The translations under genes and the position numbers were made by a program. Positions 43,151 through 64,000 of a stretch of DNA of 64,000 nucleotides are shown here, piece by piece. The first letter of the stretch is position 1. The number at the start of each line of letters is the position of its first letter. The stretch covers positions 86,986,001-87,050,000 of the forward strand of contig NC_043000.1 of the NCBI RefSeq assembly GCF_006345805.1, written 5' to 3'. The stretch is from Octopus sinensis (Eukaryota). The notes under the pieces were generated by a model that was given only the letters and a program-made list of their open reading frames with translations, was not told where the DNA came from and made no database searches.

Positions 43151-44535
43151 TTAAATGTCAAAGGGTTATTCTTTTAATCCCTGAATGAATGAAAACAACA
43201 AAGCAGTGTTAGCATCTGCCAGGCTGTCTAGTGAGTAGAAAACCTATCATCATCACAGACGCTTAATGTCCACTTTATCATATTCATTGCATTGGTCAGA
43301 TGGAGTTTGTTGAGGTAGATATCCTTCAGCCAGGGAGCCAGTGAGATGTCCTTCTTGTTGCCAAACCTTTGTTGCATTTTCCAAGCAAGGTAATATTTCC
43401 CCATGGCCAGAGATGTTTTTTTCATGGAAGACTGGAAATGAACAACCACATTTGTATGATGATACTCATTTAGAGTCATCACATGATGTCAATACAGGGA
43501 TACACACATACACCTACCACCACCATCACCACCGCACATATATAGGAGGGACTTTTTCACTTTCTGTCTACAAAATCCACTTACAGGACTTTGGTTGACC
43601 TAAGGCTGTAGTAGAAGACACTTGCCTGCCTGCCTGTATGCATATATATATGTATGTATCTACATTTATCTGTCTATGAATAAATATAGGTATGTACGCA
43701 CATATATATATGCATAAATATATATGTATGCATGCACATGCATATATATATATGCATGTATGTATATGTAGGAAGTCAACGATGAAAGGCTTGAGTGTCA
43801 GGTTGAGAAATTTTAAAATACAATCTTTTAGAAATAATGCAACTCACCATTTATTTTATTTATATTTCAGACCATCCCACCTTCCTAAAAAAATTTTATT
43901 AACTAATTAAGATGAGATAACAGTTAAGAAATGTTACTGAATGAAATGGCTATTGTATTTAACTTTACAGTTTATCTTAATGTAAAATATTTGTAAAATA
44001 TATACTAAGTTTTATGATTCAACATACAGACTCTGTGTGTGCATATATATATAAGTGCAAACAAGCTCATACTGAAAAAGCAGTCAAAAACATGGACAAG
44101 AAAATTTAAAAAAGAATATCTTCAATGAAAGCTTATTATATAAACCTCCAACCTTTTCTTTTTATTATGAAGTTTAGATACAAGCAAAGAAATTCAATAT
44201 ATTAACAAAAAAAAAACAAAATAAAAAAAGCAGACCAACAAAACATTATAGAATCTCAATAACTCTTTTTGACAATCATTATGAAATTGTATACTGTTAT
44301 TTTCTTCAAAATTAAAAAAATAAAATGTTTAAATTGTATTCTTTTTGTCAGAAAACAGCCAAATTGTCTTGAAGACTGTACCAAAGACACACTTGGTGTA
44401 TCACAAAAATCTAATATGCCTTGTACAAGATAAAATTACTTACTTTACACTTGACTAAACTAGTTTTAGTTGTTTTCTTTTTTATGAAATTAATTCACTA
44501 CATGTTTTATTTTGTTCTTGTGCGATATATATATA

Positions 44536-44866
44536 GGGAAATCCCCCATCCCATCAGGAATCACTGCTGCATTGCTTAAAATATATGGTGGTGTAGGTTA
44601 TGGTCTAGTCACCCGTATTGTAAATCAGCTGGTTCACAAAGGAGTCATTCCCAATGATTGGTATAGCAGCACTATAATCACCTGCTACAAAGGTAAATGT
44701 GCTGCCTTAGACAGAAATAATTACAGAGGTATCAAATTGTTGGATCAGGTGATGAAAGTTACAGAGAGAGTCATAGCCCAACTAATTAGGGAGAGAGTTA
44801 GCTTAGACGAGATGCAGTTTAGTTTTGTGCCAGGGAGAAGCACCACTGATGCTATATTTCTGGTAA
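44536..44866 (+). mobile_element. Internal RTE RT fragment flanked by direct repeats of about 165-175 bp
   Basis: YKGK...RNNYRGIKLL...MQFSFVPGRSTTDAIF; the flanks 44361-44535 and 44865-45026 are near-identical. Confidence 0.88.
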
Positions 44867-45051
44867 ATTGTCTCAAAGACACTTGGTGTATCACAAAAAT
44901 CTAATATGCCTTGTACAAGATAAAGTTACTTACTTTACACATGACTAAACTAGTTTTAGCTTTTCTTTTCTTTTCTTTTTTATGAAATTAATTCACTACC
45001 TGTTTTGTTTTTGTGCAATATATATACATACATATATATATATATATATCA

Positions 45052-46445
45052 ATAATAAAAGGGTAAAATCAATTAATTATTAATTAATTTCACCAAGTAG
45101 TGTTCAGTATGTAAAAGGACCATTCAAGGTATATTCAAAATATTACGTTATATAATTAGGGCTCAGTAAAATAATTTACTTTACCACATACTGAAACTTT
45201 TAGAAATAGCAGCCAAAAAGTTTTTTTAGCCATTTCTTCTACTATAAGAAAAGTCTCCCAGATAGTGTTTACTCAAAAATAATTCCCGTAGATATGGAGG
45301 GAAAAACAAAATATAACATGTACAAAGATCATTTGAGAACGTTAATGTTTCTAGATTGTCGAATTAAAATTCGACATTTCTTTCGTCAGCTCAACATTTC
45401 TTAATTTGGATTTGAAAGCACTAAAAATTGAACATACCCGTCTGATATGAGTAACCTCAGACAAATCATCTCCAAACTGCCAGTGCCAGCAAATTCAAAA
45501 CGTATGAGTGAAGATTCGTATTCTTCCTGCTTCCATCCACGTGAGTTATAGAGTAAACAGATTATTACGGTGAGAACCGCAGTAAAGAACAGGGAGAAAG
45601 GAATTGTATTATCAATAATAAAAGGGTAAAATCAATTAATTATTAATTAATTTCACCAAGTAGTGTTCAGTATGTAAAAGCGCCATCCAACCAAAATGCA
45701 AATATATGGGAAACTACCACCTGTGTCATCTCTTGTGAAAAGTAGGAGAGTCCAGTTTGCTGGACATTGTTGTAGAGCTGAAAAAGAAGTAATTTCTACT
45801 CTTCTCCTCTGGAAGCCATCTACTCGCAGTACCAGAGGGCGCACACTCTCCTACCCTGATGTAATCTCCAGGGATACAGGCATCCAGCAACAGGACCTCC
45901 GTAATGCCATGATGGACCGTGAAGTCTGGCGTAGCATGGTAAATTCCATTGTCTCGACCACGGTCGAACAATGACGATGATGATGTATATTCAAAATATT
46001 ATGTTATATAATTAGGGCTCAGTAAAATAATTTACTTTACCACATACTGAAACTTTTAGAAATAGCAGCCAATCTTCACTCGTACTTTTTGAATTTGCTG
46101 GCACTGGCAGTTTGGAGATGATTTGTCTGAGGTTACTCATATCAGACGGGTATGTTCAATTTTTAGTGCTTTCAAATCCAAATTAAGAAATGTTGAGCTG
46201 ACCAAAGAAATGTTGAGTTTTAATTCGACTAATCTAGAAATGTTAACGTTCTCAAATGATCTTTGTACATGTGATATTTTGTTTTTCCCTCCATATCTAC
46301 GGGAATTATTTTTGAGTAAACACTATCTGGGAGACTTTTCTTATAGTAGAAGAAATGGCTAAAAAACTTTTTGGCTGCTATTTCTAAAAGTTTCAGTATG
46401 TGGTAAAGTAAATTATTTTACTGAGCCCTAATTATATAATATAAT
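45052..46445. mobile_element. Penelope-like element end with a tandem partial repeat and an inverted copy, interrupted by an RTE 3' end (45681-45985)
   Basis: ataataaaagggtaaaatcaatt occurs at about 45052 and 45615; 46072-46440 is the reverse complement of about 45145-45515; hammerhead motif at 45333-45394. Confidence 0.75.
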
Positions 46446-51545: not shown

Positions 51546-52393
51546 ACTATACCAGCGGAGTCGTCTACCAGCGCAAAATGAAGGAAATCATATTGAAGAT
51601 ATTATTTGTTAATATTCCAATTGAATAAAATGTTGAAGATTTTGCATTTATTTCTTGAAAATATACATTTTGCCTATGTGTCCAGACTTTAGGCACATCC
51701 TGTATAATATCTTCATTACTTCTTCCAATTTCAAGGTGGTGAATTGGCAAAATCGTTAATGCCTGGTGGTATTTGAGTATCTTTACATTTTGAATTCAAA
51801 TTTCGCCAAACTCAACTCTACCTTTCATCCTTTTGGGGTCAATAAAATAAAGTACCATTCAAATACTAAGAGTCAATGTAATCGAACAACTTCCCTCCTC
51901 CTAAAATTGCTGGCCATGGACCAACATTTGAAACAAGTGTTATAATATATAGTCAAATCAAAAGGACCAATGAAAATAACAACATGCAATAAAAAGTGGC
52001 AATAAGAATGATGTAGCCCAGTGCTAGTTGTCCAACCCGTGCTAGCACGGAAAACGGACGTTAAACAATGATGATGAGAAAAAGATGGGATGGCCATTAC
52101 TGCAACGTCATAGATCAGTTAGGGCTGTCCTACGGTTAAACAACAAAACATGCTTAATAGTTTCCAACAATTTAAGTGGTACCTCGGTAGCTCGTTAGGC
52201 CAATAATAAACACTAGTTTTATTTCAGTTCTTTATCATTCGACAATTGGTTTACTATTTAACTATGAATGCTCGATTAATTATTTGGCTAGTCAAACAAT
52301 CTCAGAGCCGAAGATGACCTACAGTAGAGAGAGAGAGCATGTCATTGAAGAGGTCGCATAATTGGAGAGAAAAGGACTTCGACAAACATAACT

Positions 52394-53871
52394 GGGTACT
52401 TGTCTATTGTCGTGGTCCCGGTTTCGCACGCGCCAGACGTAGGTATTCGATACTCGAGATCCTACGAGGTGACTTGCGCATGCGCAGTGCAGAATTCGCG
52501 CATGCGCGTTACCACCCCCTAAAAAAAAAGGTGTTGGATTTCACTAAAAATATATATGTGTGTGTGTGTGTGTGTATATATAACATTTTCAATTTTACAC
52601 AAAAAAATTACATAGTTGCTTTCCTCGCGGATTTACAGATAAATGAATTAATTACTATTTTACAGAATAAAATTAATGAATTAATTATATAAATTAAATA
52701 ATTCTTGAAAATTAATTAATATTAATAATATTTTTTGAACAAAGTAAATAATTTATAAAACTTGGTTAATAATTTTTTTTACACAAACGCGAACGTATAT
52801 AATTTGTGAAACTTTTTTTTTTTTTACAGACGTATATAATTTGGTAAACTTAATGAATTAATTTCTTCTCATCATCATCATCGTTTAACGTCCGTTCTCC
52901 ATGCCAGCATGGGTTGGACGGTTCGACCGGGGATCTGGGAAGCCAGAAGGCTGCACCAGACTCCAGTCTTATCTGGCAATGTTTCTACAGCTGGATGCCC
53001 TTCCTAACGCCAACCACTCCGAGAGTGTAGTGGGTGCTTTTTACATGCCACCCGCACAGGTGCCAGGAGAGGCTGGCAACGGCCACGGTCGGATTGGTGC
53101 CAGTCGAGGCGGCTCTGGCATCGGCCACGATTCGGATAGTGCTTTTTACGTACCACCAGTCCAGGGGTCCTGGCATTTGCCGGGTACCACACTTGCCCCA
53201 ACATGTCTTCGCAAGCAAAGGGGGTTGGCGTGGGTGCCTGTCGTGGGATGAGGTTCGATATCAACTTCGCTTGCCTCAACAGGTCTTTGTGTATAAATGT
53301 ATAAATTTTTCGCACTAAATTCTTTCCGTAGAATTTATCAAAAAACGCGCAAAATTATTCCGTAGAATTTATCAAATTAAAAAACGCAAAATTAATATAT
53401 TTTTTGAAATTGCAAATTATTTAGAATATAAAACAAATGAAGTTAAATTTTAAAAATAAATGTCATATACTTATACTCTGTAAGGTGCTGTGTTCACACT
53501 TCAATTTACTATTTTCTAGAAATGTTGCTTTTCTAATTGAAACAATTTTTCTCAATCTCCATTTAAAAGTCCATAATGCCTCTTGAACCATATCAAAATG
53601 AACAACTTTGAATTACGCGGCGGCGGTGGTGGTGGTGTGAGGTTCTAATTTTTTTTCTGATCTCTCTTTGCCCCCTCTTTATCTCAGTTGTTCATTCCGC
53701 TAATATTTAGAAAAATTTTCGCGCCCAATTTTTGTTGTCGCGGGAAAAGATGAACGATTTAAAATAAATATATCTTAATTGTAGTGTGAGAAAGTATATA
53801 TATTCTGATGACAAAATATATTATCTTTCAAAAACATCCCAAATTTATAGACTATATCGTGTAGGTTTAAG

Positions 53872-53916
<45 letters not shown>

Positions 53917-55268
53917 AGAATGAAACATCTTTCATCTGTCTCCCCACCACACCTCCATCTAGGGGGGCAAAGAGAGATCAGAAAAAAAATTAGAACCTCA
54001 CACCACCACCACCACCGCCGCCGCCGCGTAATTCAAAGTTGTTCATTTTGATATGGCTCAAGAGGCATTATGGACTTTTAAATGGAGATTGAGAGAAAAA
54101 TTGTTTCAATTAGAAAAGCAACATTTCTAGAAAATAGTAAATTGAAGTGTGAACACAGCACCTTACAGAGTATAAGTATATGACATTTATTTTTAAAATT
54201 TAACTTCATTTGTTTTATATTCTAAATAATTTGCAATTTCAAAAAATATATTAATTTTGCGTTTTTTAATTTGATAAATTCTACGGAATAATTTTGCGCG
54301 TTTTTTGATAAATTCTACGGAAAGAATTTAGTGCGAAAAATTTATACATTTATACACAAAGACCTGTTGAGGCAAGCGAAGTTGATATCAAACCTCATCC
54401 CACGACAGGCACCCACGCCAACCCCCTTTGCTTGCGAAGACATGTTGGGGCAAGTGTGGCACCCGGCAAATGCCAGGACCCCTGGACTGGTGGTACGTAA
54501 AAAGCACTATCCGAATCGTGGCCGATGCCAGAGCCGCCTCGACTGGCACCAATCCGACCGTGGCCGTTGCCAGCCTCTCCTGGCACCTGTGCGGGTGGCA
54601 TGTAAAAAGCACCCACTACACTCTCGGAGTGGTTGGCGTTAGGAAGGGCATCCAGCTGTAGAAACATTGCCAGATAAGACTGGAGTCTGGTGCAGCCTTC
54701 TGGCTTCCCAGATCCCCGGTCGAACCGTCCAACCCATGCTGGCATGGAGAACGGACGTTAAACGATGATGATGATGAGAAGAAATTAATTCATTAAGTTT
54801 ACCAAATTATATACGTCTGTAAAAAAAAAAAAAAGTTTCACAAATTATATACGTTCGCGTTTGTGTAAAAAAATTATTAACCAAGTTTTATAAATTATTT
54901 ACTTTGTTCAAAAAATATTATTAATATTAATTAATTTTCAAGAATTATTTAATTTATATAATTAATTCATTAATTTTATTCTGTAAAATAGTAATTAATT
55001 CATTTATCTGTAAATCCGCGAGGAAAGCGACTATGTAATTTTTTTGTGTAAAATTGAAAATGTTATATATACACACACACACACACACACATATATATTT
55101 TTAGTGAAATCCAACACCTTTTTTTTTAGGGGGTGGTAACGCGCATGCGCGAATTCTGCACTGCGCATGCGCAAGTCACCTCGTAGGATCTCGAGTATCG
55201 AGTACCTACGTCTGGCGCGCGCGAATTCGCGTGTGAGAAACCGGGACCACGACAATAGACAAGTACCC
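52394..55268. mobile_element. 2,875-bp non-autonomous foldback DNA element; arms about 1.3 kb, 284-bp spacer, 6-bp TSD ATAACT
   Basis: ATAACT|GGGTACTTGTC...GACAAGTACCC|ATAACT; arms 52394-53676 and 53961-55268 are near-perfect reverse complements. Confidence 0.92.
52870..53290 (-). mobile_element. RTE-tail retroposon in the left arm, mirrored at about 54352-54778
   Basis: (cat)n cgtttaacgtccg...; mirrored ORFs 52901-53251 and 54395-54745 differ by one residue. Confidence 0.9.
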
Positions 55269-55807
55269 ATAACTGAATGATTTTAAAAAGTAAATCAATT
55301 GATGAATAATAAAAAATCAAAAAAGAACCAGCGCGTGTTTTTATTATAGGTAAAATGACCGCTCTCCCTGAAAATACAAAATTTGTTTCAATACACGAGT
55401 TCACATTCAGAATCTTGCAAATCAAATAATAACGATAAAAAAAAACGTTCAGGGGAAATAACGTCTGTTTTATGACAACAGTAAATAAATCAATACAGTG
55501 TTGCCTCCCCTGGTTTCATACCGGTCGGTAATCTGAAATGTAACTTGAAATCTTTACACCGGTATGTAGATATCTGAAAGGAAAAAAATCATTGATACAT
55601 CTCCGTTACCTTCAAATACTTGAGATCTTGATATACTTAATAACCATAATAATTTAATGAAAATAAAAGTAAAAACACAAAATATCAAATGGCATTTCTT
55701 TTTATATAAAATATTTCCACTGTTACTAACTTATATAATCGTAAAAAGAAGAAAACAAAAGAACAGTGACTATCAAAGAGTTCATGACATAGACAAATAA
55801 AGTTTTC

Positions 55808-55975
55808 TCAGAGGTCATACTGACTCTTAGAACGTTTTTGGTAGAGCAAACGAGCTTCTTTCTCGATAGTACGGTGTTTAGCCTTGGAATATACATCATA
55901 CATGACGTAAAAAAAGCCAGCAGATACAACAACTATTGACGTATAACCAAAAATCTTTAACTTCGGCGGAGCCAT
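55808..55975 (-). CDS. Unassigned 55-aa single-pass membrane microprotein (MAPPKLKIFGYTSIVVVSAGFFYVMYDVYSKAKHRTIEKEARLLYQKRSKSQYDL)
   Basis: Hand-translated ATG-to-TGA ORF in non-repetitive DNA; hydrophobic segment at residues 8-26 and a basic/charged tail; candidate acceptor ttttaaattttag 16 nt upstream; ATTAAA at 55653-55658. Confidence 0.6.
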   Translation of the reverse strand: MAPPKLKIFGYTSIVVVSAGFFYVMYDVYSKAKHRTIEKEARLLYQKRSKSQYDL

Positions 55976-56086
55976 TGGTGAGACTTGAATACTAAAATTT
56001 AAAAACGTGAGGCATTCAAGACTAAAATATCAATAAGTTCTGGAATAACCTTGAGGTGGGGTTAAGTTTAATCCGTGTAGCTGCTT

Positions 56087-56260
56087 CTACTCCGATTCTG
56101 ATTTTGATTCCTCAGTATTAGTGCACGCCTGCTTCTTCAATACTTCTTCATTGTATTTTTCAAAATTTGGTTTCCAAATATATATTCCACCAAGCACGCC
56201 GATTACGGTTGCAACAATTATTTGGTCCCAGCTCAGTCGACGACGAGGAAGAATTCGCAT
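56087..56260 (-). CDS. PIGBOS1: PIGBOS1-like microprotein, 57 aa (MRILPRRRLSWDQIIVATVIGVLGGIYIWKPNFEKYNEEVLKKQACTNTEESKSESE)
   Basis: RRLSWDQIIVATVIGVLGGIYIWKPNFEKY aligns ungapped with human [30 protein letters not shown] (16/30 identical; human sequence recalled from memory). Preceded by a GTAAGT...TTTCAG intron. Confidence 0.88.
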   Translation of the reverse strand: MRILPRRRLSWDQIIVATVIGVLGGIYIWKPNFEKYNEEVLKKQACTNTEESKSESE

Positions 56261-56271
56261 AGTTGACGAAT

Positions 56272-56372
56272 CTGAAAGCGAACTGTAGTTATCTCCCTTG
56301 ATATAACATCTTTTGCATTTAAAATATTTACCAGTTACTTCACTGTTACGAAGCGTCTCTATAGAAACTTAC
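56272..56372 (-). other. 101-bp 5'-UTR intron of the PIGBOS1-like gene
   Basis: Minus strand ttcg|GTAAGTtt...cgctttCAG|attcgtcaactATG. Confidence 0.75.
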
Positions 56373-56470
56373 CGAATAACTGCTGTTTGTTTAGAACAAG
56401 CGGTCAAAACAGCGATATAGATGATGAGAGGGGAACCCGCGATCTTTTTGGTTTTTAAGATCGGCTTTCT
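56373..56470 (-). promoter_or_regulatory. Putative non-coding exon 1 / promoter-proximal region
   Basis: CpG-retaining unique sequence directly upstream of the splice donor; the transcription start is not determinable. Confidence 0.45.
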
Positions 56471-56784
56471 GGAAGAAGTTTGGATTTATAAATAAAAAAT
56501 TATTTTTGTTGATTACACCCCCTCCATACGCACACACACATACATTAGTATACCCGTGTCAAAAAAATGATGCTATTTTAAAACAAATTAACTGAAACTA
56601 GTATTTAAAAATGCATCGACATCAAAGTACATTCTTTATATCTTATATAGTTTTGTTACAATCCGTCATATATTGCTAGGTTAAGTAATGATCTTGTTCA
56701 TTTACCTTATTATTATGAATGTATTATATTCACTCCATAGTCACTGTAGCATGCAATCCATACACATAAATATCATGTCATGTC

Positions 56785-56822
<38 letters not shown>

Positions 56823-56867
56823 GCACACCACACCTTTTTTAGAACAGTGGATCTCGAAATACTTAAA

Positions 56868-57255
56868 ACTATAATAAAATGTAAATATTAGTTTCAAATT
56901 TTGGCATAAGGCCAGCAATTTCGGAAGAGGGGTCAGAAAGGATGGAAAGCGAAGTTGACCACGGTCGAATTTGAAGGCAGAATGTAAAGACGGGCGAAAT
57001 GCTCGCCGTGCCAACGGTTCTGTGTTCCCATGGCTTTGATAGTACGTAAGTATTGGTTTCAAATTTTGGCCCAAAGCCAGCAATTTTGGGGGAGGGGTAG
57101 ATCGACTTCAGTGCTCAACTGGTACTGATTTTATTAACCCCGGAAGGATGAAAGGCGAAGTCGACCACCTCGGTGGAATTTGAACGCAGAACGTAAAGAC
57201 GGACGAAATGCTGCTAAGCATTTTACCAGGTGTGCTAACGGTTCTGCCAACTCAA
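56868..57255 (-). mobile_element. Family C SINE copies
   Basis: aaggatgaaaggcgaagtcgacc...ggaatttgaacgcagaacgtaa is the reverse complement of the 58.3-kb SINE. Confidence 0.8.
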
Positions 57256-57399
57256 TACTTTGATAGCACGTAAATATTGAGATGAAAAACCCTTTTGGAA
57301 ATGTGAGTTCGTGTCCTTCGACTTTTTCTAATCCGATATTTATATATTATTATATATTATTATTTATAGCTTTATGTAGTTCAAGATCTACTGTTCCAA

Positions 57400-57670
57400 A
57401 GATATCTTTTATTTGTTTCAGTTATTTGACTGTGGTCATGCTGAGGTACCACTTTGAAGAGTTTTAGTAGAATAAATCGACCCCCAGGACTTTTTTTTTT
57501 AAGCCTAGTACTTATTCTATCAGTCTCTTCTGCCGAAAACAATAAGTAAACACACCAACACCGGTCGTCAACCGGTGGTGAGAGACAATCACAGACACAA
57601 ACACATACGCGCGCGCGCGCTTCTTTCAATTTCCGTCTATCAAATCCACTCACAAGGCTTTGGTCGGCTC
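57400..57670 (-). mobile_element. Family B SINE, 3' part
   Basis: cttctttcaatttccgtctatcaaatccactcacaaggctttggtcggc. Confidence 0.75.
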
Positions 57671-57912
57671 GCGTGTGTGAGTGAGCATATGTATATATGC
57701 ACATGTATGTGGGTGCACGTGCACGCATGTGTATGTATGTACATGCGCGCATACGCGAATCCTATGAGCTGTTTTTACTTTCTCCCCTTTCCGGTTTTTT
57801 CCCTTTATTTAACGGTCATTCTAATAGCCCTTTTGTTTGTCTTAATAACGGTAAACTTCATAGTAATTTCCCTTTGTTTAACGGTCATTTTCATAGCATT
57901 TTTGTTTTGTCT

Positions 57913-57975
57913 TAATAACTGACGAGATGCCGGAGCAGATTTCCGCCCCGACATCCGAAACTCGGAGTTTTATTA
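57913..57975 (+). ncRNA. Type I hammerhead ribozyme motif at a Penelope-like end
   Basis: TAATAA CTGACGA GATGCCGG agcagatttccgcc CCGACATC C GAAA CT CGG AG TT TTATTA. Confidence 0.75.
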
Positions 57976-58098
57976 TAGCAATCTAATAATTGTCACATAT
58001 TTTACAGATAAATTCCTCTATTTATATAATGTCGAGGTCTCATTCATTCTTCTGTTGTCGTACTATTACTATTAATAAAGTAGATATAATATATAAAG

Positions 58099-58152
<54 letters not shown>

Positions 58153-58306
58153 CGCAATGTACAAATTTTATTTTCATTTACTTTTCTACTACGTGCAATG
58201 GAACAAAAAACTAAAACAAAAGGGAAGCAAACACGGAAGAATTGATTAATTAAATTAAACAAATACAATATAGTTTCAAAAATAAGTGAAGACATGGGGT
58301 AAGAAT

Positions 58307-58722
58307 AGAAGGCGGCGAGCTGGCAGAATCGTTAGCACGCCGGGCGAAATGCTTAGCGGTATTTCGTCTGCCGTTACGTTCTGAGTTCAAATTCCGCCGA
58401 GGTTGACTTTGCCTTTTATCCTTTCGGGGTCGATTAAATAAGTACCAGTTATGCACTGGGGTCGATGTAATGGACTTAACCCGTTTGTCCCCTCTGTGTT
58501 TAGCCCCCCCCCTGTGGGTAGTAAAGAAATAGGTATTTCGTCTGCCGTTACGTTCTGAGTTCAAATTCCGCCGAGGTCGACTTTGCCTTTCATCCTTTCG
58601 GGGTCGATTAAATAAGTACCAGTCACACACTGGGGTCGATGTAATGGACTTAGTCGCTTTGTCTGTCCTTGTTTGTCCCCTCTATGCTTGGCTCCTTGTG
58701 GGCAATAAAGAAATAAGAAAAA
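58307..58722 (+). mobile_element. Family C tRNA-SINE with internal duplication
   Basis: aaggcggcgagctggcagaatcgttagc...gagttcaaattccgccgagg occurs twice. Confidence 0.88.
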
Positions 58723-61079
58723 AGAAATAAAAGGTGTTGTACTTGTTTGGGAAGCAAGTTTATCCGAGAACAGAAATACGTACATCGTTGAAGTTTCTTT
58801 GTTGCCATTCCACCCCGTCCCCATAACACACACGCGCGCACACAAACACACGTACACACACACATACACACACATACATACATGCACGCACACACACACA
58901 TAGTTGTATTCACTTTTTGTATATACTGGTTTCAAATTTTCGCACAAGACCAGGAGGTCTTAAGTCGATTACATCGACCCCAGCGCTCAACTGGTACTTA
59001 GTAGAAGGTAAGTTCTTGGGGAAACTCTGGACGTCGACGGGAATCAACTAGCTGGTTTATTCCGGTGGACTTTCGGCCAGGGCCAATGGATACTTTTCAG
59101 ATATCTTTGACCTGGCAGTGTCACCGATATGGTTTTTCAAAAGCCTTAAATAATATTTTTTAAAAAATCGCGGTGTACCTAGAATTGCAGCCAGAATTAT
59201 CTTTAGATGTTCCAATGCCAGTACGCTGTCCCGATGAAGTAGGCCTCTCCTTCTACTCATGTTAAACTGTGTCCCCCTCTTGGGCTTCGATGCTACAACA
59301 CCCATTGCAGCTTTAAGCCATCACTGCTTTCCACTCACCAACATGTGAAACACTGCTTGGGAACAATTGCCCTATTGTCTTTAAAGAAGAAAAGTAGTTT
59401 GAAAAATGTAGTTCTAAATGAATAACATCATTTTATAATGGTTCACTTTTCATTCTTTCCCCGTGTATTTTATATTGTACTCATACAAATATACAATTAT
59501 TCTCGCGCATTCGCCATTACTATCAATGTCAGTGTTTATTGTGCATAAGAATTAAACAATTTGTGACACAGAGGTCTATAGATGGTGCGGTAACCCCAAC
59601 TCCACTCAAAGAAACTACGTACATTATATACAAGAAGACACCCTTACCACCTGCCTAGGTTCACTCGCAGCACACCAATGGTCGTTGAAATATGAAGTTT
59701 TCCTATCGCACCCTATATAACATTCAACAGCTGCTCAACAGGTCCACAGATACATTCAATTTAAAAATATAAATTTAAAAGATTGGTTGGATGCACACTA
59801 AAACACCTCAATGACTTTCTTGTAGACTGCATCAACTAATTGCTGACCCATGTTCTAGCTATCGTATGGTCGGAGAAAAATAGACGTGATGGACACGGGT
59901 ACAACGTCGTTTTAACTTCAAATTTACGCGTTTAGGACGGACCGGGGCCTAAACGACAACAAAACCAAATAACAACAAGAGTAGAAACAAAAACAACAAC
60001 AATAGTTTACTTTCTCATTCTACCCTTTATTTCAAGGATTTAAATAGCAGCAATTAACCATTTTTGCCCAAAACAATGCATTGCTGACGATCTTATCTAT
60101 TCTTCTAGTTATGTGTAACTGAACCACAGAAAGAATGGTTAAGTATCCAGTTCCTAATTTACCTGATAACATCGTATTCTTGTTTGACAACGGCAGTTTT
60201 CTTGTCAATTAACCACTTAATTAATTAAGCTAATTGCTTAAAGACTAGAACAAATTAATTAATTTATTTCTATGTGAAACAATACAAGCATGGCTCAGAA
60301 ATCGTCATATTACTTATTTTAATACTGTAGAGAGTTTCACACCTGGTTAGTATTGTTTGTTTTCTAGTTATCGTGACTCTGTCTAGTCAGGTAGGCATGA
60401 ACTAAATTTACAGCATAACACAACTATTGATTCATTGGACAGAATTTGTAGAATTCAGAGAAGCGTCGCTGTGAAGACGTCTACTTTGGCACGTCTTGTA
60501 CACCACCATTATGCCAACCACCACTTCCAGCAGTAGCAACAGTAACAACAATCACAACAACAACAGCAACAGCATCAACAACAATAGTAGCAATGGCAGC
60601 AGCAATCATATCTTATTATCTTCAATAGCTTTCAACAAGCTATAACCATGATCTGCTAGAAGTAGCAATCAAATCTCCCACAAATCCTCCATGTTTTCAA
60701 TAGTTTTCAACTAATAATAACCCTATCTTGGATACCCCTCGTTGGGTCTGATATCGACTAATGTAAGACAATGACATATAGTAATGTATCTTAAAACATT
60801 GGTTGGCAACGGCTGGAATGCATTTAATCATAAGTCAGGATTGATGTGGGCCGAAATAATAAAAAAATTACAATAGCGACATTAAGAAACGAGCCATCCG
60901 CTTCATTGTCGTTTGGCCAGCTAAAGCATTAGCCAACTGTCCCTCATACCACACCGTACCGTCTTATAAAAGAAGAATAAATCTGCATAAAGTCGGGATG
61001 GTCATGACTGAAATGCTTTTGTCTTTTAGATTAGAATTGACCCAGAACTCCTCCTCCTCCTCCTCCTCCTCCTCATCAA

Positions 61080-61111
<32 letters not shown>

Positions 61112-61436
61112 ACAGTAGCAGTAGCAGCAGCTTTACTTAACAACCATTCACTATTTGTGACGCTCCCAACATTTACAAAGTTGAGCTATGTCTAGTGTGA
61201 TAGACTAATGAAATAATAATCAGTTACTGTATATAGTCCACTTTACTGAATTTAAGTTAATGTATATAACACACATTTTCATTTAGGTGCCTAAACTGTT
61301 TCGAAAAGTTCTTCTAATATCATATATAATATGCAGTGTTGTAGCACTGATAATTGATCATAAGCCGACATACTATTTTTAATATTTCATAATATAAAAA
61401 TATATTAATATAGAATAAAAGAGCGGGCGAACTTTT

Positions 61437-61600
61437 ACACGTGGCTGTGTGGTAAGCGGTTAATTTTCTAACCACATGGTCCCGGGTTCAATCTTTCTGC
61501 GTGATACCTAGGGCAAGTGTCTTCTTGTCCTAGCATCGGGACGGCCAAAGTCTTGCGATTGGATTTGGTGGAGGGAAACTGAAGAAAACGCATCATACAG
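61437..61600 (+). mobile_element. Family B SINE
   Basis: gtggctgtgtggtaag...ggttcaat...ctagggcaagtgtcttc...ggatttggtggagggaaactgaag. Confidence 0.75.
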
Positions 61601-61699
61601 TATATATATATCGTCAGTATATCATATATCCGAAAAAGACGCACACTCAAAAGCATAGAGTAGTAATATATCTATATGGAGTTAAATCTATGTCCGGTC

Positions 61700-62430
61700 A
61701 TAAGGTGACCAATGGTTTTGGATCTACAAAGGCCTTAGCCCTGTGAACTTATCGTAAAATTCTAAAACCAAATGCAAATGTAACTCTTCACCTCTGGGAG
61801 GTAGGTCTCCGTTACGGTCATTTGGTCAGTTAGTCACCAAAGAATAGCCCGGGATCAGCGAGGACGGGTTATTTCTCTTAGACCAGGATTTTCGTGGTCC
61901 AAAAGCGGGGGAACAAGGGATTTATCTCTTGGGCTGCTCTTGGATCGTGAGGACCCTCCCGGGTCTGATCGGAGAACGAGGAATCCCATGCTTGCAGCAG
62001 GTAGCGTTTGAAATGGATGCAAAGAATGTAAATTTCCTGGCGAGTGTTCAGTGATTCAGGTTTCAGGGAGTCTTTGAATATCCTTACTCACTCAGCTATA
62101 CAAAGCTTGCAGCTTTCGCTCCCGTTAGTGTAGTGTCCCGGCCGCTCTAAGATTCTCTACTTGATATTGTATGGGGGCCCCTTCATCTTTAAGGCATCAC
62201 ACGTCGCTGGCCAGGGATGTGACGAATCGTCTTTCCGGAATCCTGAAGGAAGACCTGTGGTTGTACAAGTGTCTATACAAAATCTTCCTGTATTTGTGGT
62301 TTGCTGGGAAATGTTTATTTAAAAATTCTGTATTTTGCGGCTTGGTAGACGATTCATCGTGAAAAATGCACTCAAATTTGGGAAATACAATTCTTGGAAA
62401 AACGCTTTTATAGCTAAGAAAACTCCATCA
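61700..62430 (-). mobile_element. Decayed Penelope GIY-YIG endonuclease region plus 3' UTR
   Basis: Minus frames give IVYQA, YNHRSSFRIPERRFVTSLA, YTNGSESCKLCIAE and LNTRQEIYILCIHFKRYLL. Confidence 0.82.
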
Positions 62431-63180
62431 AAATAATTAGGTACTCTCAAGCGGGCATGCGCTAAGTATCTGTTATATAAAACTGGTGCTCCTACCGTCG
62501 TTGAATGAAATCACCGGACAATGGCCTCCTACATGGTAGGGTGCTACCGAGTATTATTGTAGTACACAAAAATATAATCTTTGCTTTATGTCCTCTGCGA
62601 TTGTTAATGCGACGCATCATGGTGATCGTTTACACACTCGCCAACGTTGACCAGCTAATAACAGCTGATTACTACTACTACCAGCCTGTTGATCCCATGC
62701 GGCTTCCATACCATAAAATACAATATTTGCGTGTGTGTGTTTGTTTGTGTGTGCGTGCGTGTGTGTTTATACACACACACACACACACACACACATACAT
62801 ACTTTCATATTTATATATATGCATGTATGTACGTACGTACGTATATTTATCTCTGTCTGTCTATCTGCGTGCGCGCGCGTGTGTAAAAACAAAAAATCCA
62901 CAGGAAATGTGATACGCAGAATAGTTTCCGTTACAGCTATTTCAGAATTTACTCAGGTTACATCATTAACTCTAATGCCTAGGAACATATACAATATATA
63001 TGCGCAGACGCAACGTTATACAATAAGACGAATTCGAAGTGTTCAGGAATATGGTCTAATGCATGACTATTCAATTGTATTGTATAATGTGCGCGTGCAT
63101 AGATAGATAGATGGATACATAGATACATACATACATACACACGCATGTGTGTATGTGCGTGTGTTTGTGTGTGTGTGTGT

Positions 63181-63510
63181 GTGAAGGCGCATGACTCAGT
63201 GGTTAGAATGTCGGGCTCTCAATCACGTGGTAGTGAGTTCGATTCCCGGACCGGGCTGTGTGTTGTGTTCTTGAGCAAGGCACTTTATTACACATTGCTC
63301 CAATTCACTCAGTTGTAAGAACGAGTTGCGACGTCACTGGTGCCAAGCTGTATCGGTCTTTGCCTTTCCTTTGGCTAACATCAGTGGCGTGGTATGCATG
63401 AGTGACTGCTGGCCTTGCACAAAAACAAACTTTCCCGGTTGTGTCTCAGAGGATAACTTTGTAGGGGCAATCCCATGGTCATTCATGACCGAAAGGGGTC
63501 TTTAAACCTT
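63181..63510 (+). mobile_element. Family A tRNA-SINE
   Basis: A-box-like tgactcagtgg, B-box gttcgattcc, then gtgttgtgttcttgagcaaggcactt. Confidence 0.88.
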
Positions 63511-63523
63511 TATATACCCCCCC

Positions 63524-63554
<31 letters not shown>

Positions 63555-63561
63555 ATATATA

Positions 63562-64000
63562 TACGAGCAAAACGCCCTCCGTCCAATGGACGGTGTTGAG
63601 TTGTCAAACATTAAACCAAATTTTCTCAAAACAACTTGTCCGGCCGTCCCATAGGCCTCCTCTTTGAGAAACACTGATTTAACCTAAATTTGGGACACCA
63701 GCAAAAGAAGAAATAAAGATAGACTTTTTTTTAGTCCCAAGAAAAGCGATTTTATTCACACAAATATGCAACCGAAGAGTTTAAAGTACCTGTAATGATA
63801 AGGCTGTTGACTAGGGGAACACAAATATGGTTTAAACAGTAAGCTTGGCAGGAAAGAAACGTGCACGTTCCCACGGCTTTATCGTTCGTATTCTCACCTG
63901 GAATCGATTTTTGTCTTTTTTTCAAGACTTATACACGCCCTGATACCGTCGGTATCTACATATCAAATTTGAGCGCAATCGGATGGAGGATGCCCAAGAT
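63562..64000 (-). mobile_element. Helentron/HINE-like element running off the window end
   Basis: Terminal hairpin ccgtccaatggacgg next to (TA)n; caaatttgagcgcaatcgg core-like motif at the window end. Confidence 0.4.

What the first reader, a model, noticed from the sequence alone, without database searches (positions are those of the whole stretch)
55640..56470. One non-coding leader exon apparently feeding two different membrane microproteins
Seen: on the minus strand, a GTAAGT donor at 56372 can join acceptor 1 (56272, 11 nt before the PIGBOS1-like ATG) or acceptor 2 (ttttaaattttAG at 55992, 16 nt before the ATG of a 55-aa ORF). Each ORF is followed by its own ATTAAA (56067-56072 and 55653-55658). 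The ORFs are 111 nt apart and share a layout: short basic N-terminus, one hydrophobic segment, charged tail. Known: bicistronic pairs of mitochondrial microproteins exist in animals (Drosophila sloth1/sloth2). Inference: an alternative-last-exon or bicistronic locus that co-regulates PIGBOS1 with an unknown partner. I know of no such arrangement for PIGBOS1. Both ORFs are under 60 aa, so the ORF track misses them.
Basis: partly seen in the sequence, partly recalled or inferred. Interest (0 to 1): 0.85.

Follow-up and report, generated by a model that had tools for sequence, protein, structure and literature searches.

The report
PIGBOS1 gene with unproven downstream ORF
The window holds a genuine, apparently unannotated copy of the mitochondrial microprotein gene PIGBOS1, followed by a second small membrane-protein-like reading frame that is also intact in one related species, but neither that frame's coding status nor the proposed shared-leader splicing can be shown from sequence alone.

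Summary
ORF1 (56260-56087, minus strand, 57 aa) is a real PIGBOS1 homologue: Pfam PF23670 scores 52 bits against a cut-off of 27, it is 44% identical to ape PIGBOS1, and omega is 0.24 with no second-codon-position changes against the only relative found. ORF2 (55975-55808, 55 aa) has no homologue in any search. It is intact in the relative, with the same start and stop and no indel. Its substitutions look almost neutral, though: omega 0.55, changes 8/7/9 across codon positions, not significant. The flanking non-coding sequence is about as conserved as ORF2.

The splice model fails the one comparative test available. The relative lacks the GTAAGT donor, the acceptor-1 AG and both ATTAAA signals. 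The "leader exon" is the least conserved stretch of the locus. The relative keeps only acceptor 2, which is weak in the window, and a different donor, GTAAAT at 56331.

No RNA data were reachable, so transcript structure is unresolved. The most likely reading is one collinear PIGBOS1 transcript with ORF2 in its downstream tract. I put the chance that ORF2 makes a functional protein at about 0.3. Interest is modest.

The parts
56087..56260 (-). ORF1: a 57-aa PIGBOS1 homologue with a short basic N-terminus, one hydrophobic segment and an acidic/basic tail.
   Evidence: Pfam PF23670 gives E=6.9e-14 and 52.2 bits against a cut-off of 27. It is 84% identical to P0001 and 44% identical to ape PIGBOS1 P0003. 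Omega is 0.24, codon-position changes are 9/0/10, and the BLOSUM simulation gives P<1e-4.
55808..55975 (-). ORF2: a 55-codon ATG ORF with one TM-like segment (residues about 8-26) and a basic tail. Its coding status is unproven.
   Evidence: Listed. No hit in Pfam, the word-index search, the exhaustive phmmer search or PDB. It is intact in L001 at 765-932 with 73% aa identity. Omega is 0.55 with changes 8/7/9, not significant.
55976..56086 (-). The 111-nt spacer. Its 5' half is poorly conserved and has indels. Its 3' half (56033-55994) is 92% conserved. It contains a conserved 7-codon mini-ORF (ATG at 56015 to TAG ending at 55992).
56367..56372 (-). It is strong in this genome and absent from the relative.
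   Evidence: Weight-matrix 99.3rd percentile. It lies in a 9-nt gap of the alignment with L001. The surrounding 40-nt windows are 45-55% identical.
56272..56273 (-). The AG of acceptor 1, 11 nt before the ORF1 ATG.
   Evidence: 95.9th percentile. The relative reads TTTCAT here, and has no acceptor at or above the 85th percentile between its donor at 419 and its ORF1 ATG at 491.
56273..56336 (-). A 90-92% conserved block directly upstream of ORF1. It contains the conserved CTG|GTAAAT donor-like site (G at 56331) and an A/T-rich TAAATATTTTAAA stretch. It could be the 5'UTR or core promoter of ORF1, or a conserved donor region.
55992..55993 (-). The AG of acceptor 2 (TTTTAAATTTTAG), 16 nt before the ORF2 ATG.
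   Evidence: 78th percentile in the window. Conserved in the relative, where it is stronger: TTTTTACATTTTAG, 92.7th percentile.
56067..56072 (-). ATTAAA lying 15 nt after the ORF1 stop.
   Evidence: The relative has ATTGAA here and a TATAAA about 25 nt further on.
55653..55658 (-). ATTAAA lying 150 nt after the ORF2 stop. A 97% conserved U-rich block (55695-55657) precedes it.
   Evidence: The relative has ATTAGA here, followed by an insertion carrying AGTAAA and AATATA.
55490..55574 (-). A highly conserved block (92-100%). It is entered by the strongest acceptor-like site in the region (TTTTTTCCTTTCAG|, last intron base at 55574). A conserved donor-like CCG|GTATGA follows 53 nt later (G at 55521). 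It could be a 52-nt exon of this or a host transcript, or a conserved non-coding element.

Best explanation
Shown: ORF1 is a genuine PIGBOS1 orthologue under purifying selection.

Inferred function: by homology with human PIGBOS it is a signal-anchored microprotein of the mitochondrial outer membrane.

Inferred gene model:
- ORF1 is expressed from a transcript whose proximal 5' region is the 90%-conserved 60-nt block directly upstream of the ATG. The poorly conserved GTAAGT 'leader' is not part of it.
- That transcript runs collinearly through the spacer and ORF2 to a 3' end near 55640.
- ORF2 is therefore an ORF inside the PIGBOS1 downstream tract (3'UTR). It has stayed open in two species, but its substitutions are close to neutral.
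- On present evidence PIGBOS1 is the only demonstrable protein product. ORF2 is at most a young, fast-evolving, weakly translated downstream cistron.

I put the chance that ORF2 makes a functional protein at about 0.3.
For: ORF1:
- Pfam hit above the gathering score.
- Omega 0.24, no second-position changes, P<1e-4.

Collinearity and site conservation:
- The relative's contigs align with the window across the whole locus.
- They lack the GTAAGT donor, the acceptor-1 AG and both ATTAAA.

Conservation profile:
- Lowest over 56432-56333, the 3' part of the leader and its donor.
- 90-92% just upstream of ORF1.
- About uniform, 83-89% without gaps, from the 3' half of the spacer through ORF2 to 55440. 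ORF2 is therefore no better conserved than its non-coding neighbours.

ORF2:
- Omega 0.55, changes 8/7/9.
- Amino-acid changes no fewer than in simulation (P=0.35), and BLOSUM score P=0.18-0.19.
- No homologue anywhere, and no relatedness to ORF1.

Context:
- ORFs of this size are common here, at 1.1 per kb per strand.
- In human PIGBOS1 the whole CDS lies in the terminal exon (PMC6814811).
Against: - ORF2 kept its ATG and its stop, gained no in-frame stop and has no indel in the relative. My rough joint neutral probability is 0.02-0.04. It combines P(no indel)=0.07 and P(stop-free)=0.40 with my own estimate for ATG retention.
- ORF2 has a microprotein-like layout that 86 other ORFs in the window lack.
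- Its ATG has G at +4 in both species. ATGs between the two starts are mildly depleted: 2 seen against about 6 expected.
- The 3' half of the spacer, including acceptor 2, is 92% conserved. This would fit a real splice site.
- In this genome the GTAAGT donor and acceptor 1 are jointly unlikely by chance.
- All comparative evidence rests on one relative at dS of about 0.25-0.3.
- No RNA data were available.
Confidence: 0.45

Rival explanations
1. This is a true two-protein bicistronic mRNA. ORF1 and ORF2 sit on the same mature transcript and both are translated. ORF2 would be reached by reinitiation after the short ORF1 or the mini-ORF, or by leaky scanning. The pair would work like Drosophila sloth1/sloth2.
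For: - The ORF pair is collinear, on the same strand, and kept intact in two species with similar spacing: 111 nt and 100 nt.
- The relative's ORF2 has no frameshift or stop.
- ORF2 has a TM-plus-basic-tail layout.
- Its start has +4 G in both species and -3 G in the relative. Intervening ATGs are mildly depleted.
- There is precedent for single-TM smORF pairs on one transcript (PMC9681215).
Against: - ORF2 omega is 0.55 with a flat codon-position distribution, not significant.
- The C-terminal half is conserved at synonymous and non-synonymous sites alike, by my count of substitutions in the alignment.
- ORF1's ATG has A at -3, so it is not a weak start.
- A conserved ATG mini-ORF lies between the cistrons, and ORF1 contains an out-of-frame ATG.
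- The spacer is 111 nt, against 5 nt in sloth.
- The two ORFs are not paralogues.
- ORF2 has no homologue anywhere.
Confidence: 0.25
2. This is an alternative-last-exon locus. A non-coding 5' exon is spliced from GTAAGT (56372, this genome only) or from the conserved GTAAAT (56331) to acceptor 2 (55992). That isoform carries ORF2 alone. ORF1 mRNAs keep the ORF1 segment and end at a poly(A) site in the spacer.
For: - The GTAAGT donor is at the 99.3rd percentile and acceptor 1 at the 95.9th in this genome.
- The GTAAAT donor is conserved in both species (96.8th and 97.3rd percentile).
- In the relative, the next acceptors at or above the 85th percentile after that donor are at 698 and 748, and 748 is acceptor 2.
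- The 3' half of the spacer is 92% conserved and pyrimidine/U-rich. It fits a 3' splice site, a downstream element of an ORF1 poly(A) site, or both.
- Each species has some poly(A) signal variant after ORF1 and after ORF2.
- Human PIGBOS1 has a non-coding first exon.
Against: - The GTAAGT donor, the acceptor-1 AG and both ATTAAA are absent from the relative.
- The leader is the least conserved segment.
- Acceptor 2 is only at the 78th percentile in the window, one such site per 85 nt.
- GTAAAT lies in an A/T-rich conserved block that could equally be a promoter or 5'UTR.
- ORF2 lacks coding constraint.
- The relative's contigs run unbroken through every proposed junction. They look genomic, so this says little either way.
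Confidence: 0.2
3. Both ORFs lie inside an intron of a larger host transcript on the minus strand. Its exon would be the conserved 52-nt block 55573-55522. PIGBOS1 would be a nested gene and ORF2 would be irrelevant intronic sequence.
For: - The strongest acceptor-like site of the region is at 55574: 100th percentile in the window and 99.6th in the relative.
- A conserved donor-like site follows 53 nt later (97.2nd percentile in both).
- The sequence between and after them is 92-100% conserved.
Against: - No coding exons or Pfam domains were detected nearby.
- The 32 nt after the putative donor are 100% conserved, more than the 'exon' itself. This suggests a non-coding element rather than an exon.
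- The fold is not unusual, z=-0.86.
- There is no Rfam family.
Confidence: 0.1

Closest known systems
Human PIGBOS1 (PIGB opposite strand 1): a 54-aa signal-anchored mitochondrial outer-membrane microprotein that binds CLCC1 and modulates the unfolded protein response (PMC6814811)
   Same: ORF1 matches the Pfam PIGBOS1 family over residues 6-54 and is 44% identical to ape PIGBOS1. The size is similar (57 aa against 54). The layout is the same: short basic N-terminus, one TM segment and a charged C-tail. The whole CDS sits in one exon.
   Different: PIGB was not detectable head-to-head within 7.6 kb, but that test is insensitive. A non-coding first exon is possible in this genome, but its splice sites are not conserved in the relative. 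No ORF2-like sequence follows primate PIGBOS1. Localisation and CLCC1 binding are untested.
Drosophila sloth1/sloth2 (SMIM4 / C12orf73 orthologues): a bicistronic pair of single-TM mitochondrial smORFs translated by leaky scanning (PMC9681215)
   Same: There are two tandem same-strand smORFs of 55-80 aa. Each has one predicted TM segment. The linkage is kept in a second species.
   Different: sloth1 and sloth2 are paralogues separated by 5 nt, and the upstream Kozak sequence is weak. Here the ORFs are unrelated. They are 111 nt apart with an intervening ATG mini-ORF, and ORF1 has A at -3. ORF2 lacks demonstrable purifying selection. A shared transcript has not been shown.
Downstream (3'UTR) ORFs of animal mRNAs
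   Same: ORF2 follows a conserved main CDS on the same strand. Its sequence conservation is no higher than that of the surrounding non-coding tract.
   Different: ORF2 is long for a chance downstream ORF in AT-rich sequence. It is kept open in a relative and has a membrane-protein-like layout.

Membership tests
PIGBOS1 (Pfam PF23670), for ORF1 | Sequence match to the family profile above the curated gathering score | tested here: met
   52.2 bits against a cut-off of 27, E=6.9e-14, residues 6-54 on profile positions 2-51 of 54. The relative's copy P0001 carries the same precomputed Pfam domain.
PIGBOS1 (Pfam PF23670), for ORF1 | A protein of about 54 aa with one TM segment near the N-terminus (aa 7-29 in human) and a charged C-terminal region | tested here: met
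   57 aa. The best 19-residue Kyte-Doolittle window averages 1.52 and starts at residue 10. The tail is rich in K and E. The human features are taken from PMC6814811.
PIGBOS1 (Pfam PF23670), for ORF1 | Protein-level purifying selection | tested here: met
   Omega 0.24, substitutions 9/0/10 by codon position, and none of 30,000 simulations reached the observed BLOSUM score.
PIGBOS1 (Pfam PF23670), for ORF1 | Head-to-head arrangement with PIGB | tested here: inconclusive
   Apes have PIGB (PF03901) on the opposite strand 1.45 kb upstream. No Glyco_transf_22 hit was found in the three + frames of 56400-64000. However, ape PIGB exon 1 is an open stretch of about 56 aa that gave only weak chance-level tblastn hits (E at least 0.44), so the test cannot detect it.
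PIGBOS1 (Pfam PF23670), for ORF1 | Two-exon gene: a non-coding exon 1 and the whole CDS in exon 2 | tested here: inconclusive
   A good donor (56372) and acceptor (56272) pair exists in the window, but both are missing in the relative. No RNA data were reachable.
PIGBOS1 (Pfam PF23670), for ORF1 | Mitochondrial outer-membrane localisation and CLCC1 interaction | not testable with these tools
   These are experimental properties (PMC6814811).
Bicistronic smORF pair (sloth1/sloth2 type) | Both ORFs present on one mature transcript | not testable with these tools
   The exact products are not on record in the assembly index. The relative's contigs look genomic: they are collinear, end next to microsatellite sequence, and carry contig indices in the millions.
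Bicistronic smORF pair (sloth1/sloth2 type) | Both ORFs under purifying selection | tested here: inconclusive
   ORF1 meets this. For ORF2, omega is 0.55 and P is 0.18-0.35, although the ORF is intact in the relative.
Bicistronic smORF pair (sloth1/sloth2 type) | The two ORFs are paralogues | tested here: not met
   hhalign probability 0.3% over 8 aligned columns.
Bicistronic smORF pair (sloth1/sloth2 type) | Very short intercistronic gap and a weak upstream start, allowing leaky scanning | tested here: not met
   The gap is 111 nt and holds a conserved ATG mini-ORF. ORF1 has A at -3 in both species. sloth has a 5-nt gap.
Bicistronic smORF pair (sloth1/sloth2 type) | Linkage conserved in other genomes | tested here: inconclusive
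   Kept in the single relative found. Absent downstream of primate PIGBOS1. No other invertebrate PIGBOS1 loci could be retrieved.
Alternative last exons fed by one leader exon | Shared donor conserved | tested here: not met
   GTAAGT at 56372 lies in a 9-nt gap in the relative. A different donor-like site, GTAAAT at 56331, is conserved.
Alternative last exons fed by one leader exon | Both acceptors conserved | tested here: not met
   The acceptor-1 AG is lost in the relative (TTTCAT). The acceptor-2 AG is conserved, but it is only at the 78th percentile in the window.
Alternative last exons fed by one leader exon | A separate conserved poly(A) signal for each terminal exon | tested here: not met
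   ATTAAA becomes ATTGAA at the first site and ATTAGA at the second. Only non-positional variants lie nearby. A[AT]TAAA is common here.
Alternative last exons fed by one leader exon | Junction-spanning reads | not testable with these tools
   No transcriptome data were reachable.

The most novel reading that the evidence does not exclude
PIGBOS1 in this lineage is physically and transcriptionally coupled to a lineage-restricted second single-pass membrane microprotein (ORF2). ORF2 would be either a downstream cistron or an alternative terminal exon that uses the conserved GTAAAT donor and acceptor 2. This would be the first known partner gene or co-regulated pair for PIGBOS1.
Probability: 0.3. 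Interest if true: 0.55.

Novelty: new member of a known kind. Interest (0 to 1): 0.3.

Why it matters
PIGBOS was described as having no paralogues or homologues (PMC6814811). In the databases searched here, only mammalian copies and one unnamed sequencing-run contig were found. A clearly constrained copy in this repeat-rich animal genome extends the family. The case also shows how annotation misses such genes.

If ORF2 proved to be translated, the locus would give a natural handle on PIGBOS1 function through a co-expressed membrane partner. It would also add a non-paralogous example to the few known animal two-smORF loci. If ORF2 is only a 3'UTR ORF, the finding is ordinary.

Tried and rejected
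- **Exact-product look-ups.** Looking up ORF1 and ORF2 in the assembly index to find transcript contigs gave nothing; neither is on record.
- **ORF2 homologue searches.** All were empty: the word-index search, an exhaustive phmmer search of 1.84 billion representatives (its single hit P0002 did not align), Pfam for both species' ORF2, a PDB profile search (only chance SecE TM matches at E of about 1), and a metagenome scan.
- **More PIGBOS1 loci, to test linkage.** A single-sequence search found only P0001. It retrieved only mammalian PIGBOS1. A metagenome scan found nothing.
- **Identity of the relative.** I searched papers for the SRA run numbers SRR11869384/85/91/94. The only hit was to an unrelated shorter accession.
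- **PIGB synteny.** A Pfam scan of three frames upstream was negative. tblastn with ape PIGB exon 1 gave only weak chance-level hits (E at least 0.44), so the test is too insensitive to count.
- **Tandem duplicates.** Rejected.
- **Repeat or TE origin.** Rejected: the locus is unique in the window.
- **Conserved block at 55574-55490 as a known RNA.** There is no Rfam hit and the fold is unremarkable.
- **ORF2 as a continuation of an upstream coding exon.** Rejected: the relative has an in-frame TAA between acceptor 2 and the ATG (read).
Full report
**Observation**

- ORF1 runs 56260-56087 (57 aa).
- ORF2 runs 55975-55808 (55 aa), 111 nt downstream.
- TCG|GTAAGT has its G at 56372.
- An AG acceptor ends at 56272, 11 nt before the ORF1 ATG.
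- A second AG ends at 55992, 16 nt before the ORF2 ATG.
- ATTAAA lies at 56072-56067 and at 55658-55653.

The locus is unique within the window. It sits in repeat-rich, AT-rich sequence.

**Are the elements more than chance?**

I used a crude splice weight matrix, built from approximate consensus frequencies, and ranked each site against all GT or AG sites in the 38-kb non-satellite part of the window.
- The GTAAGT donor is at the 99.3rd percentile (0.39 such sites per kb per strand).
- Acceptor 1 is at the 95.9th percentile (2.2 per kb per strand). Having both in the right order within 112 nt of an ATG is unlikely by chance.
- Acceptor 2 is only at the 78th percentile, about one such site per 85 nt.
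- A[AT]TAAA occurs 2.1 times per kb per strand, so neither poly(A) hexamer is informative.
- ATG-ORFs of at least 55 aa occur 1.1 times per kb per strand, and 0.42 per kb per strand carry a TM-like segment.
- Only ORF2 passes a post-hoc filter of 'N-terminal TM plus charged tail' (1 of 87). ORF1 itself fails that filter's hydrophobicity threshold.

**ORF1**

ORF1 is a PIGBOS1 homologue.
- Pfam PF23670 gives E=6.9e-14 and 52.2 bits against a gathering score of 27, covering residues 6-54.
- It is 44% identical to ape PIGBOS1.
- Its exact sequence is not on record in the assembly index.
- The only non-mammalian relative retrievable was P0001. It is 84% identical and sits on four ~1.7-kb Logan contigs from runs SRR11869384/85/91/94.

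**The relative**

Those contigs (L001-L004) have the following properties.
- They align collinearly with window ~56766-55273 at 79% identity.
- All four start at the same base, and three of them end at the same base.
- They end next to microsatellite sequence.
- Their contig indices run into the millions.

I therefore take them as genomic DNA of a related species. Its identity could not be established. They give no transcript evidence.

**Comparative test of the two ORFs**

Both ORFs are present in the relative, at L001 491-664 and 765-932, with a 100-nt spacer.

| | ORF1 | ORF2 |
|---|---|---|
| Nucleotide identity | 89% | 86% |
| Indels | none | none |
| Omega | 0.24 | 0.55 |
| Substitutions by codon position | 9/0/10 | 8/7/9 |
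| Simulations reaching the observed BLOSUM score | 0 of 30,000 | P=0.18-0.19 |
| Amino-acid differences | 9 (simulated mean 13.0; P=0.03) | 15 (simulated mean 16.2; P=0.35) |

ORF1 shows clear purifying selection. ORF2 keeps the same start and stop but shows no significant constraint.

Evidence in favour of ORF2:
- Staying stop-free has probability 0.40 under neutrality.
- Having no indel in 168 nt has probability 0.07, or about 0.17 if in-frame indels are allowed.
- With retention of the ATG, my rough joint probability is 0.02-0.04.
- The one polymorphism inside ORF2 among the four contigs is synonymous.

Evidence against ORF2:
- Ungapped identity runs at about 83-89% from the 3' half of the spacer through ORF2 and on to 55440.
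- ORF2 is therefore no better conserved than the non-coding sequence around it.
- By my count of substitutions in the alignment, its well-conserved C-terminal half is conserved at synonymous and non-synonymous sites alike.

**Homology of ORF2**

Nothing was found in any of these searches:
- Pfam, for both species' sequences.
- The 5.8-billion-protein word-index search.
- The exhaustive phmmer search of 1.84 billion representatives. Its one listed hit did not align.
- A PDB profile search, which gave only chance TM matches.
- Metagenome contigs.

ORF2 is also unrelated to ORF1 (hhalign probability 0.3%). A 55-aa query has little statistical reach in databases of this size, so distant relatives are not excluded.

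**Comparative test of the splice model**

The relative contradicts most of the model.
- GTAAGT lies in a 9-nt deletion.
- The acceptor-1 AG reads TTTCAT.
- No acceptor at or above the 85th percentile lies between the relative's only good donor (CCG|GTAAAT at 419) and its ORF1 ATG.
- ATTAAA is ATTGAA after ORF1 and ATTAGA after ORF2.
- The 'leader exon' is the worst conserved segment: 61% identity including gaps, and 45-55% in 40-nt windows over 56432-56333.

The conserved features are different ones.
- A 60-nt block directly upstream of ORF1 (56332-56273) is 90-92% identical. It contains CTG|GTAAAT and an A/T-rich stretch.
- The 3' half of the spacer is 92% identical and includes the acceptor-2 AG, which is stronger in the relative (92.7th percentile).
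- A U-rich block just before the second ATTAAA is 97% identical.
- A block at 55574-55490 is 92-100% identical. It is entered by the strongest acceptor-like site of the region and contains a conserved donor-like site.

**What this leaves**

Four gene models remain.
- (a) Collinear transcript, confidence 0.45. The conserved proximal block is the 5'UTR or promoter, PIGBOS1 is the main CDS, and ORF2 is a 3'UTR ORF.
- (b) Bicistronic mRNA, 0.25. The same transcript as in (a), but ORF2 is translated by reinitiation or leaky scanning.
- (c) Alternative last exon, 0.20. Splicing runs from GTAAGT or the conserved GTAAAT to acceptor 2. ORF1 isoforms end in the spacer.
- (d) Host gene, 0.10. The exon is 55573-55522 and both ORFs are intronic.

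Model (a) needs no unconserved signal, and it fits the near-neutral substitution pattern of ORF2. Across the models, I put the chance that ORF2 makes a functional protein at about 0.3.

**Comparison with known systems**

Human PIGBOS1 has a non-coding first exon, and the whole smORF lies in exon 2. The protein is a signal-anchored mitochondrial outer-membrane protein with a TM segment at aa 7-29, and it was reported to have no paralogues or homologues (PMC6814811). ORF1 matches it in sequence, size and layout.

The head-to-head PIGB arrangement seen in apes could not be tested here. PIGB exon 1 is short and gave only weak chance-level tblastn hits, E at least 0.44.

The sloth1/sloth2 precedent differs in every testable respect. 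Those ORFs are paralogues, 5 nt apart, with a weak upstream Kozak sequence (PMC9681215). Here the ORFs are unrelated and 111 nt apart, a conserved ATG mini-ORF lies between them, and ORF1 has A at -3. Nothing ORF2-like follows primate PIGBOS1.

**Verdict**

The PIGBOS1 call is correct and is a modest novelty: an unannotated family member outside mammals, at least in the databases reachable here. The headline claim, one leader exon feeding two microproteins, is not supported by the only comparative evidence available. It cannot be settled without RNA data. ORF2 is a candidate, not a demonstrated gene.

Noticed in passing
window 55490-55574 (minus strand): A 92-100% conserved non-coding block. 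It is entered by the strongest acceptor-like site of the region (TTTTTTCCTTTCAG|, last intron base at 55574). A conserved donor-like CCG|GTATGA follows 53 nt later. The next 32 nt are identical in the relative. It contains a 9-bp hairpin (CAUACCGGU...ACCGGUAUG). It is unique in the window, has no Rfam hit, and its fold z-score is -0.86.
   Followed up: partly
window 52423-55225: A near-perfect inverted repeat. Its arms reach 741 nt at 100% complementarity (52813-53553 and 54093-54833) around a 369-nt centre. It starts about 580 nt downstream of ORF2. It could be a recent inverted duplication or a foldback assembly artefact. The relative's contig diverges from the window near its edge.
   Followed up: partly
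window 2777-17919, 19070-22524 and 4-1255: There is a 382-bp satellite (39.6 copies, 99% matches), a 109-bp satellite (31.8 copies) and a (TA)n tract of about 1.25 kb. These explain the strongly skewed base composition of the first 26 kb.
   Followed up: partly
window 55657-55695 (minus strand): A 97% conserved U-rich block lies immediately upstream of the second ATTAAA. It is possibly an upstream element of a 3'-end processing site, although the hexamer itself is not conserved.
   Followed up: no
window 56512-56690 (minus strand): A stretch 250-430 nt upstream of ORF1 is 80-87% conserved. That is better than the putative leader exon lying between it and ORF1. It could be a promoter, an enhancer or another exon. 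A conserved acceptor-like AAAG|C site lies next to it at about 56465.
   Followed up: no
window 44512-44904 and 45696-45974: Both ORFs look by eye like fragments of a LINE-type retroelement. The first has reverse-transcriptase-like motifs.
   Followed up: no
window 52339-52692 and 55031-55425: Repeated tRNA-like SINE-looking segments (translated motif VLVYCRGPGF...) flank the locus, together with (GT)n microsatellites.
   Followed up: no
L005/L006 (ape PIGBOS1 loci): PIGB (PF03901) ends 1.45 kb upstream of the PIGBOS1 CDS on the opposite strand, which confirms the head-to-head arrangement. The first ORF downstream of PIGBOS1 is Alu-like, not ORF2-like.
   Followed up: yes
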